The notes under the pieces: generated by a model
What the model saw: the letters and a program-made list of their open reading frames with translations, nothing else
Database searches by the model: none
Told to the model about the DNA's origin: nothing
Part shown: positions 9,797 to 10,147 of the stretch, in pieces
Position numbering within the stretch: the first letter of the stretch is position 1
Layout of the letters: each line of letters opens with the position of its first letter
Assembly: GCA_044892505.1 (NCBI GenBank)
Contig: CM097883.1
Coordinates: 445,408,001-445,472,000, forward strand
DNA length: 64,000 bases
Direction of reading: 5' to 3'
Origin: Schmidtea nova
Lineage: Eukaryota
Program-made: the position numbers and the translations under genes

Positions 9797-10147
9797 TGTG
9801 GTGACCTTTTATCTGTTAAATTTTAATTCTTCATTAATGAAATTTGATTAGATAAAAGTATTAAAATATTGATAATTAATCGTGCATTGACAATATTGAA
9901 AAAAACTAATTTTGTTTAAATATTGTATATTTTTAGAAAAATGGAGGATAATGAAATTGTAGTGAAAATAAAGATTGCTCGTGTCTATTGTCAGCCTTAT
10001 GTTTTATCATATAATACCACATTGGTGTCAGAAGTGGGAGTATTTCAATATTGTCAATGCACGATTAATTATCAATATTTTAATACTTTTATCTAATCAA
10101 ATTTCATTAATGAAGAATTAAAATTTAACAGATAAAAGGTCACCACA
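9797..10147 (+). mobile_element. 351-bp foldback insertion: LTR (9797-10021) + tRNA-Leu PBS (10023-10040) + inverted U3 (10043-10147)
   Basis: 105-bp inverted arms 9797-9901 / 10043-10147; TGT...ACA ends; TSD GTGTT (9792-9796, 10148-10152); absent from the sister duplicate (~3190). Internal TGTGGT...ACCACA LTR-like unit with AATAAA, followed 1 nt later by TGGTGTCAGAAGTGGGAG. Confidence 0.85.

What the first reader, a model, noticed from the sequence alone, without database searches (positions are those of the whole stretch)
9797..10147. MITE-like foldback apparently built from retrotransposon plus-strand strong-stop DNA (LTR + 18-nt PBS + inverted U3)
Seen: a 351-bp insert with 105-bp inverted arms, TGT...ACA ends and a 5-bp TSD (GTGTT). 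It is absent at the equivalent site of the sister duplicate (~3190, GATATTGGTCTTTTT). The first 225 bp form a self-contained LTR (TGTGGT...ACCACA, AATAAA at 9967). One nt later comes TGGTGTCAGAAGTGGGAG, matching 17/18 nt of the complement of the tRNA-Leu(CAA) 3' end as I recall it. Then TA, then an inverted copy of the LTR's first 105 bp. Established: plus-strand strong-stop DNA is U3-R-U5 plus exactly 18 nt of PBS, and Gypsy integrases give 4-6 bp TSDs. Inference: strong-stop DNA missed second-strand transfer, copied its own U3, and was integrated via two U3 att ends. If multicopy, this would be a retro-derived MITE class or a link to Ginger-type TGT...ACA elements.
Basis: partly seen in the sequence, partly recalled or inferred. 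Interest (0 to 1): 0.8.

Follow-up and report, generated by a model that had tools for sequence, protein, structure and literature searches.

The report
Foldback insert from retrotransposon LTR plus PBS
A 351-bp insertion is a misassembled reverse-transcription product of a Gypsy-type retrotransposon (one full LTR, the tRNA-Leu primer site, then an inverted copy of the LTR's first 105 bases), and I found only this one copy, so it looks like a rare accident rather than a new class of mobile element.

Summary
Window 9797-10147 is a clean 351-bp insertion with 105-nt arms that are 100% complementary, TGT...ACA ends and a 5-bp duplication (GTGTT). The 97%-identical tandem sister copy has an empty site at 3196-3200.

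The first 225 bp end in the inverse of their first 6 bases. One T later come 17 bases (10023-10039) that are the exact complement of the 3' end, CCA included, of tRNA-Leu(CAA) as printed in three papers. The same "...ACA + T + Leu(CAA) PBS" junction occurs in three unrelated elements fetched from public contigs; one of them is a complete Ty3/Gypsy element. So reading the insert as LTR + PBS is well supported.

The copy stops within 1-3 bases of where plus-strand strong-stop DNA ends. The 18th base is G where the tRNA predicts T. Best explanation: an aberrant cDNA with two U3 ends, inserted by integrase.

This origin is inferred, not shown. I found no second copy in the window or in the collections I could search, and the host genome is not available here. 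The "MITE class / Ginger link" reading is therefore untested, and it is mechanistically unlikely. Interest is moderate: a probable one-off molecular fossil.

The parts
9792..9796 (.). Left copy of the 5-bp target-site duplication (GTGTT)
   Evidence: Read directly; junction alignment with the empty sister site
9797..10021 (+). Complete 225-bp LTR (U3-R-U5). It starts TGTGGT and ends ACCACA. It holds a TATA-like run at 9926-9934 and AATAAA at 9967-9972.
   Evidence: Sequence. The end is followed after 1 nt by a tRNA-complementary PBS. Genuine Gypsy elements carry the same junction type. The U3/R/U5 sub-bounds are inferred, not tested.
9797..9901 (+). Left arm of the inverted repeat, equal to LTR bases 1-105 (5' part of U3)
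   Evidence: the repeat finder I1: 105 nt, 100% complementary
9890..9926 (.). Local imperfect palindrome inside the LTR, containing an A7 run (9899-9905). The arm boundary (9901/9902) falls inside it, which makes it a possible pause point for plus-strand synthesis.
   Evidence: Self-match 9890-9926, 84%; hairpin in the ssDNA fold. The pause-site role is inference.
10022..10022 (+). 1-nt spacer (T) between LTR end and PBS
   Evidence: The same single T spacer is present in L001, L002 and L003
10023..10039 (+). Primer-binding site: 17 nt exactly complementary to the 3' end (with CCA) of tRNA-Leu(CAA)
   Evidence: Published tRNA, probe and tRF sequences. The same 18-nt tRNA end appears in arthropod small-RNA reads. 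It is unique in the window.
10040..10042 (+). Junction bases GTA. They are templated neither by the tRNA (which predicts a different triplet) nor cleanly by the arm. Alternatively, 10040 is a miscopied 18th PBS base and the arm is 107 nt with one mismatch.
   Evidence: Sequence. L001-L003 all have T at the 18th PBS position.
10043..10147 (-). Right arm: reverse complement of LTR bases 1-105, ending ...CCACA at the target junction
   Evidence: the repeat finder I1; blastn 100% over 105 nt
10148..10152 (.). Right copy of the 5-bp target-site duplication (GTGTT)
3196..3200 (.). Empty target site (GTCTT) in the sister tandem duplicate

Best explanation
The insert is an aberrant reverse-transcription product of a Ty3/Gypsy-type LTR retrotransposon that uses tRNA-Leu(CAA) as primer, and the element's integrase inserted it.

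Shown:
- It consists of one complete LTR, a 1-nt spacer and 17 nt of PBS, then 1-3 odd bases and an inverted copy of LTR bases 1-105.
- Both termini are therefore U3-type ends (TGTGG.../...CCACA).
- It sits in a 5-bp target duplication at a site that is empty in the sister duplicate.

Inferred:
1. The left 243-246 nt correspond to plus-strand strong-stop DNA, which starts at U3 base 1 and stops about 18 nt into the tRNA primer.
2. This DNA did not make the second strand transfer. Its 3' end was instead joined to, or jumped onto, a second plus-sense U3 strand that ended in the A7 run near LTR base 105. Such a strand could be a paused nascent plus strand.
3. The 3' end then copied that strand to its 5' end, which recreated a perfect U3 terminus.
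4. Extension of the partner strand back across the first would give a 351-bp duplex.
5. A duplex with two U3 ends can be inserted in a concerted way, which gives the 5-bp duplication.

Without a second R/LTR and a PPT the product cannot be copied again through RNA, so it is most likely a dead-end, one-off insertion.
For: - Anatomy and TSD. Empty sister site.
- PBS identity with tRNA-Leu(CAA), CCA included, which only a mature tRNA carries. The 17-mer is unique in the window and about 0.06 matches are expected even with 3 mismatches.
- The same LTR-end + T + PBS junction occurs in L001 (gag, PR-RT-RH-IN by Pfam), L002 and L003, aligned.
- A Gypsy element in the same window (52555-57010) has TGTGA...ACA LTRs, a 1-nt spacer before its PBS and a 5-bp TSD AGAAC. 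Such integrases therefore act in this genome and give this TSD length.
- Plus-strand strong-stop DNA ends 18 nt into the tRNA, one base before m1A58 (PMC8599865). The break here is at 17-18 nt.
- The arms are 105/105 identical while the host duplicates differ by about 3%. This points to a recent event after the duplication.
Against: - No element with this LTR was found. It is absent from the rest of the window and from the collections I could scan, so a parent family is assumed, not shown.
- The 18th PBS base is G, whereas the tRNA and three related elements have T. A faithful copy of the tRNA would give T.
- There is no microhomology at the jump, and the strong-stop-length strand does not fold so that its 3' end lies near base 105.
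- How the second strand was made is conjecture.
- The parent's own sequence after the PBS is unknown. The break could lie a few bases inside the element's internal region, which would mean the molecule was not a true strong-stop product.
Confidence: 0.68

Rival explanations
1. It is a member of a multicopy, MITE-like family of foldback elements born from strong-stop DNA. The family would be moved repeatedly at the DNA level by a Gypsy-type integrase or a Ginger/TDD-type transposase.
For: - The 105-bp TIRs begin TGTGG, which fits the TGTNR pattern, and TIRs of 40-270 bp are described for Ginger elements. TDD-4/5 give 5-bp TSDs (PMC2836005).
- The perfect arms and perfect TSD suggest recent activity.
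Against: - There is a single copy in 64 kb, and no hit to the 22-nt terminus in genome contigs or viral contigs.
- No Ginger-like transposase is in the window. The integrase-like stretches at 24.1-25.1 kb and 54.3-55.5 kb sit next to RNase H/RT and so are Gypsy-type.
- Metazoan Ginger1 and Ginger2 give 4-bp TSDs, not 5.
- Retroviral-type integrases are not known to excise integrated DNA (established knowledge).
Confidence: 0.08
2. It is an ordinary non-autonomous DNA transposon (Ginger/TDD-like or other) whose loop only happens to resemble an LTR end plus PBS.
For: TIR length, TGTNR termini and a short TSD are shared by Ginger elements and LTR ends alike.
Against: - A 17-nt exact complement of a mature tRNA 3' end, CCA included, sits one base after the 6-nt inverse of the element's own start. 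This is far beyond chance (about 1e-5 by simple count).
- The same junction is found in real Gypsy elements.
Confidence: 0.05
3. A normal full-length element or solo LTR inserted here and was later rearranged by host repair or replication (foldback inversion plus deletion).
For: - Foldback inversions at breaks are known.
- The LTR holds a local palindrome and an A7 run at the arm boundary.
Against: - The right terminus is an exact inverted U3 end that abuts the second TSD copy.
- A post-insertion foldback would invert the flanking DNA as well, or lose the TSD. It would also have to end exactly at LTR base 1 on one side and within 3 nt of the PBS end on the other.
Confidence: 0.08
4. It is an assembly or library artefact, such as an inverted chimera.
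For: - The window has N runs at 48.3-51 kb, so the assembly is not seamless.
- Perfect palindromic arms are typical of some chimeric reads.
Against: - Both flanks continue colinearly with the sister duplicate, and a TSD is present.
- The right junction (arm end + GTGTT) shares only 6 bases with a normal U5 end. A mis-traversed repeat graph therefore could not create it.
Confidence: 0.04

Closest known systems
Ty3/Gypsy LTR retrotransposons with a tRNA-Leu(CAA) primer-binding site (for example the element on L001)
   Same: - LTR ending ...ACA, a single T spacer, then the same PBS.
- TGT...ACA termini and a 5-bp TSD, as in the Gypsy element at 52555-57010 of this window.
   Different: - No gag/pol, no PPT and no second direct LTR.
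- The right end is an inverted partial U3.
- The LTR sequence is unrelated to L001-L003 and to the in-window Gypsy element.
Plus-strand strong-stop DNA, the reverse-transcription intermediate of retroviruses and LTR retrotransposons
   Same: It starts at U3 base 1, runs through the whole LTR and ends about 18 nt into the tRNA copy (PMC8599865). Here the stretch is LTR + 17 matched nt.
   Different: - It is normally a transient single strand that is never integrated.
- Here it is double-stranded, extended by an inverted U3 piece and integrated.
- The 18th base does not match the tRNA.
Ginger1 / Ginger2-TDD cut-and-paste transposons and their non-autonomous copies
   Same: TIRs of 40-270 bp, TGTNR termini and short TSDs; an integrase-like transposase related to Gypsy integrase (PMC2836005).
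   Different: - Metazoan Ginger elements give 4-bp TSDs with target preferences (CCGG/CCGT or RTATAY). Here the TSD is 5 bp, GTGTT.
- No Ginger element is known to carry an LTR end plus PBS in its interior.
- No transposase partner was found.
TRIM / SMART miniature LTR retrotransposons and solo LTRs
   Same: Very small, non-coding, LTR-derived, with a PBS, flanked by a 5-bp TSD.
   Different: - TRIMs have two direct LTRs and a PPT and are copied through RNA.
- A solo LTR is the LTR alone.
- Here the second repeat is inverted and partial.
DIRS-type retroelements (inverted terminal repeats)
   Same: A retroelement-derived sequence bounded by inverted repeats.
   Different: From established knowledge, DIRS elements use a tyrosine recombinase, make no TSD, have no tRNA PBS next to the repeat and carry an internal complementary region. 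Here a TSD and a PBS are present.
tRNA-derived SINEs proposed to descend from retroviral strong-stop DNA (Ohshima/Okada hypothesis; cited from my own knowledge, not re-read here)
   Same: The idea that a strong-stop intermediate carrying primer-tRNA sequence can end up in the genome.
   Different: That proposal concerns minus-strand strong-stop DNA (tRNA + R-U5) and multicopy retroposons. This case is plus-strand type, integrase-inserted and apparently single.

Membership tests
LTR retrotransposon (Ty3/Gypsy-type) 5' end | LTR bounded by TG...CA with a short terminal inverted repeat | tested here: met
   9797-10021 starts TGTGGT and ends ACCACA
LTR retrotransposon (Ty3/Gypsy-type) 5' end | PBS complementary to the 3' end (with CCA) of a host tRNA, within a few nt of the LTR end | tested here: met
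   10023-10039 matches tRNA-Leu(CAA) 17/17 as printed in three papers. The same junction occurs in L001-L003.
LTR retrotransposon (Ty3/Gypsy-type) 5' end | 4-6 bp target-site duplication | tested here: met
   GTGTT on both sides; empty sister site
LTR retrotransposon (complete element) | Second LTR in direct orientation preceded by a polypurine tract; gag/pol or their remnants | tested here: not met
   The only repeat is inverted and partial. 351 bp leaves no room for genes.
LTR retrotransposon (family membership) | Other genomic copies (full-length or solo) sharing this LTR | not testable with these tools
   None in the window. The host genome is absent from the collections.
Plus-strand strong-stop DNA derivative | Begins at U3 base 1 and contains one whole LTR | tested here: met
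   The left terminus is the LTR start and the LTR is uninterrupted to 10021
Plus-strand strong-stop DNA derivative | Ends exactly 18 nt into the primer tRNA (one base before m1A58) | tested here: inconclusive
   17 nt match. The 18th base is G where the tRNA and L001-L003 give T, followed by 2 more unexplained bases.
Plus-strand strong-stop DNA derivative | PBS copied from the host tRNA rather than from the element's own PBS | not testable with these tools
   This needs the host tRNA-Leu(CAA) genes and the parent element. There is no tRNA gene in the window.
Ginger / TDD non-autonomous DNA transposon (MITE) | TIRs of about 40-270 bp starting TGTNR | tested here: met
   105-bp arms starting TGTGG. 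Gypsy LTR ends share this pattern, so it does not discriminate.
Ginger / TDD non-autonomous DNA transposon (MITE) | 4-bp TSD with CCGG/CCGT or RTATAY preference (metazoan Ginger1/2); 5 bp only in Dictyostelium TDD-4/5 | tested here: not met
   5-bp GTGTT
Ginger / TDD non-autonomous DNA transposon (MITE) | Multicopy, with an autonomous partner carrying the same TIRs | tested here: inconclusive
   Single copy and no partner in 64 kb. The whole genome was not searchable.
TRIM / SMART | Two direct LTRs flanking PBS and PPT | tested here: not met
   The repeats are inverted
Solo LTR | One LTR alone between the TSD copies | tested here: not met
   126 extra bases (spacer, PBS, filler, inverted arm) follow the LTR
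DIRS-like retroelement | Inverted terminal repeats without TSD and with an internal complementary region | tested here: not met
   A 5-bp TSD is present. A tRNA PBS is present.

The most novel reading that the evidence does not exclude
The foldback is not an accident. It would be the founding or current member of a class of small elements with two U3 ends, created from plus-strand strong-stop DNA and inserted repeatedly by Gypsy-type integrase. That would be a living intermediate between LTR retrotransposons and Ginger-type TGT...ACA DNA transposons.
Probability: 0.06. Interest if true: 0.85.

Novelty: new variant of a known kind. Interest (0 to 1): 0.45.

Why it matters
If the reading is right, this locus is a natural fossil of a reverse-transcription intermediate in an invertebrate Gypsy-type element.
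- It records which tRNA primes the family.
- It records where plus-strand synthesis stopped on the tRNA.
- It shows that a molecule with two U3 ends can be inserted in vivo with a normal 5-bp duplication.
- It shows one concrete way in which LTR ends can become terminal inverted repeats. That bears on the proposed kinship between Gypsy integrases and Ginger transposases.

Locally, it places a perfect 105-bp inverted repeat about 1.1 kb upstream of an ORF in a recent tandem duplicate. Such a repeat could act as a hairpin-RNA source or a fragile site. As a single copy it is a curiosity rather than a system.

Tried and rejected
- Other copies in the window: none, by blastn with word size 7. The one near-match to the 10-nt terminus, at 26850, has no further similarity.
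- Host genome through exact-protein look-ups of three window ORFs: nothing on record.
- Host genome through a word search with the in-window integrase ORF: only distant hits at 35% identity or less, the best named ones from the spider Trichonephila clavipes. The host is not in that collection. Its identity remains unknown; an arthropod is only a guess.
- The 22-nt LTR terminus in genome contigs and viral contigs: 0 hits.
- The single metagenome scan went to the LTR-end/PBS junction. It found analogues (L001, L002) but not the same LTR.
- tRNA genes and Rfam families in the window: none, so the host tRNA-Leu could not be read.
- Self-priming test: the 246-nt strong-stop-length strand folds no better than shuffles (z = -1.7), and its 3' end does not pair near base 105. 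I found no microhomology at the junction by eye.
- Two other inverted-repeat elements in the window (47291-48309, 59042-60011) were checked as possible members of the same class. They carry weak GIY-YIG matches and no PBS, so they are unrelated.
- Literature: the four topical searches found no description of an integrated LTR-PBS-inverted-U3 structure. The library is partial, so this is weak evidence of novelty.

Full report
**1. Observation**
- The repeat finder gives arms 9797-9901 and 10043-10147: 105 nt, 100% complementary, 141 nt apart.
- The pairing cannot be extended outward, so the element is 9797-10147 with TGTGG.../...CCACA ends.
- GTGTT lies immediately outside on both sides (9792-9796 and 10148-10152).
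- A self-comparison of the window shows a tandem duplication of about 6.56 kb (610-6422 versus 7170-13224) at about 97% identity.
- The flanks of the insert align to the sister copy on both sides and meet there at a single GTCTT (3196-3200). There is no gap or footprint.
- So this is a discrete 351-bp insertion with a 5-bp target duplication, made after the duplication.
- As single-stranded DNA it folds into a hairpin of -115.9 kcal/mol, z = -25.5.
- An assembly artefact is unlikely. Both flanks are colinear with the sister copy, and the right junction shares only six bases with a normal LTR end.

**2. What the interior is**
- Bases 9797-10021 (225 bp) start TGTGGT and end ACCACA. They contain a TATA-like run (9926-9934) and AATAAA (9967-9972).
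- After one T, bases 10023-10039 are the exact complement of the last 17 bases of tRNA-Leu(CAA), including the post-transcriptional CCA.
- I took the tRNA sequence from papers, not from memory: a probe in PMC7997516, the GtRNAdb sequence tabulated in PMC10359600 and a 3' tRF in PMC8632637.
- The same 18-nt tRNA end appears in small-RNA reads from two thrips species. It is therefore probably conserved in arthropods.
- The 17-mer occurs once in the window even when three mismatches are allowed; about 0.06 matches are expected.

**3. Independent support from elsewhere**
- I scanned metagenome contigs for the junction (last five LTR bases + T + PBS). This gave L001 and L002.
- A looser pattern (CA, any base, PBS) in the viral-contig collection gave L003.
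- In all three an LTR-like end ...ACA is followed by a single T and the Leu(CAA) PBS (aligned).
- On L001 the junction is followed by gag (Retrotrans_gag, zinc knuckle) and a pol with PR-RT-RNaseH-IN domains, which makes it a complete Ty3/Gypsy element.
- Their LTRs are unrelated to the one here. They are analogues, not copies.
- L003 comes from a collection labelled viral. I read only 884 bases around the match and did not characterise it further. Nothing there suggests anything but an LTR/PBS junction.
- The window also has its own control, a Gypsy-type element at 52555-57010. It has 130-bp LTRs (TGTGA...ACA), a 1-nt spacer before a different PBS, and a 5-bp duplication AGAAC.
- Integrases of this type therefore act in this genome and give this duplication length.

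**4. The junction**
- The three related elements, and the tRNA, have T at the 18th PBS position. The insert has G (10040), then T and A, then the inverted arm.
- One reading: the tRNA-templated stretch is 17 nt followed by a 3-nt filler.
- Another reading: it is 18 nt with a miscopied last base, followed by an arm of 107 nt with one mismatch.
- The data cannot choose between these readings.
- Plus-strand strong-stop DNA ends 18 nt into the tRNA, one base before m1A58 (PMC8599865). The break here is within 1-3 nt of that point.
- In an element of several kilobases, a random breakpoint would fall this close to that point roughly one time in a thousand.
- The inner end of the arm (9901/9902) lies in an A7 run inside a local imperfect palindrome (9890-9926). 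This is a plausible pause point for plus-strand synthesis.
- There is no microhomology at the junction. The strong-stop-length strand does not fold so as to prime itself near base 105 (z = -1.7).

**5. Mechanism (inference)**
1. A plus-strand strong-stop DNA failed to make the second transfer.
2. After adding or miscopying 1-3 bases, its 3' end continued on a second plus-sense U3 strand that ended near base 105, and ran to that strand's 5' end. Alternatively, two duplex fragments were joined end to end. Either route recreates a perfect U3 terminus in inverted orientation.
3. Extension of the partner strand back over the first gives a 351-bp duplex.
4. Both 3' ends of that duplex are the ones integrase normally uses at the U3 side, and concerted insertion gives the 5-bp duplication.
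5. The product has no second R/LTR and no PPT, so it cannot be copied again through RNA. Retroviral-type integrases are not known to excise DNA (established knowledge).
- I therefore expect a dead-end, single insertion.

**6. Rivals**
- A plain DNA-transposon MITE cannot be excluded on TIR length and TGTNR termini alone. However, it does not explain a mature-tRNA complement placed one base after the inverse of the element's own start. Metazoan Ginger elements also give 4-bp duplications.
- A later rearrangement of a normal insertion would have to end exactly at LTR base 1 next to an intact duplication.
- A multicopy 'retro-derived MITE' class is not excluded, because the host genome could not be searched. 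Nothing found here supports it.

**7. Verdict**
- The LTR + PBS + inverted-U3 anatomy and the Gypsy-type origin are well supported.
- The strong-stop origin is the best available explanation but rests on inference.
- The class-level claims are untested.
- Novelty: an unusual variant of a known kind, namely an LTR-retrotransposon-derived insertion. Interest is moderate.

Noticed in passing
window 52555-57010: A Gypsy-type LTR retrotransposon with 130-bp LTRs (97% alike), TSD AGAAC and its own, different PBS. Its domain order is PR-IN-RT-RNaseH, that is integrase before RT, as in Gmr1-like elements, and its gag has a SCAN-like match. The coding region is not one open frame: it is split over at least four ORFs, so at least three interruptions of unresolved type. 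A tandem repeat of about 54 bp sits just after the 5' LTR.
   Followed up: partly
window 610-6422 and 7170-13224: A tandem segmental duplication of about 6.56 kb at about 97% identity. Each copy carries an Asn/Lys-rich low-complexity ORF (4259-5323, 354 aa; 11250-12125, 291 aa) with no Pfam match. The foldback lies about 1.1 kb upstream of the second ORF.
   Followed up: partly
window 59042-60011 and 47291-48309: Two elements of about 1 kb, each bounded by inverted repeats of 115-177 bp (96-98% alike). Each encodes a weak GIY-YIG match below the Pfam cut-off. They may be Penelope-like element remnants and are unrelated to the finding.
   Followed up: partly
window 24137-25140: A degenerate Gypsy-type fragment (RNase H then integrase, the canonical order) with no recognisable LTR nearby. 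It is not related to the 225-bp LTR.
   Followed up: partly
window 38507-44829: Exon-like ORFs of a nucleoprotein TPR / Mlp homologue (Pfam TPR-like domain and TPR_MLP1_2). This marks the window as eukaryotic nuclear DNA. The host species was not identified.
   Followed up: no
L002:1-89 and L002:404-492: In this unrelated metagenome contig the last ~50 bases of the LTR, the Leu(CAA) PBS and ~20 more bases occur twice, 403 bp apart, at 98% identity. This is an unexplained internal duplication of the LTR-end/PBS region.
   Followed up: no
window 48337-48472, 48664-48952, 50541-50939: Three runs of N (136, 289 and 399 bases), left as they are. A 146-nt palindromic match (48518-48663) abuts one of them.
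   Followed up: no
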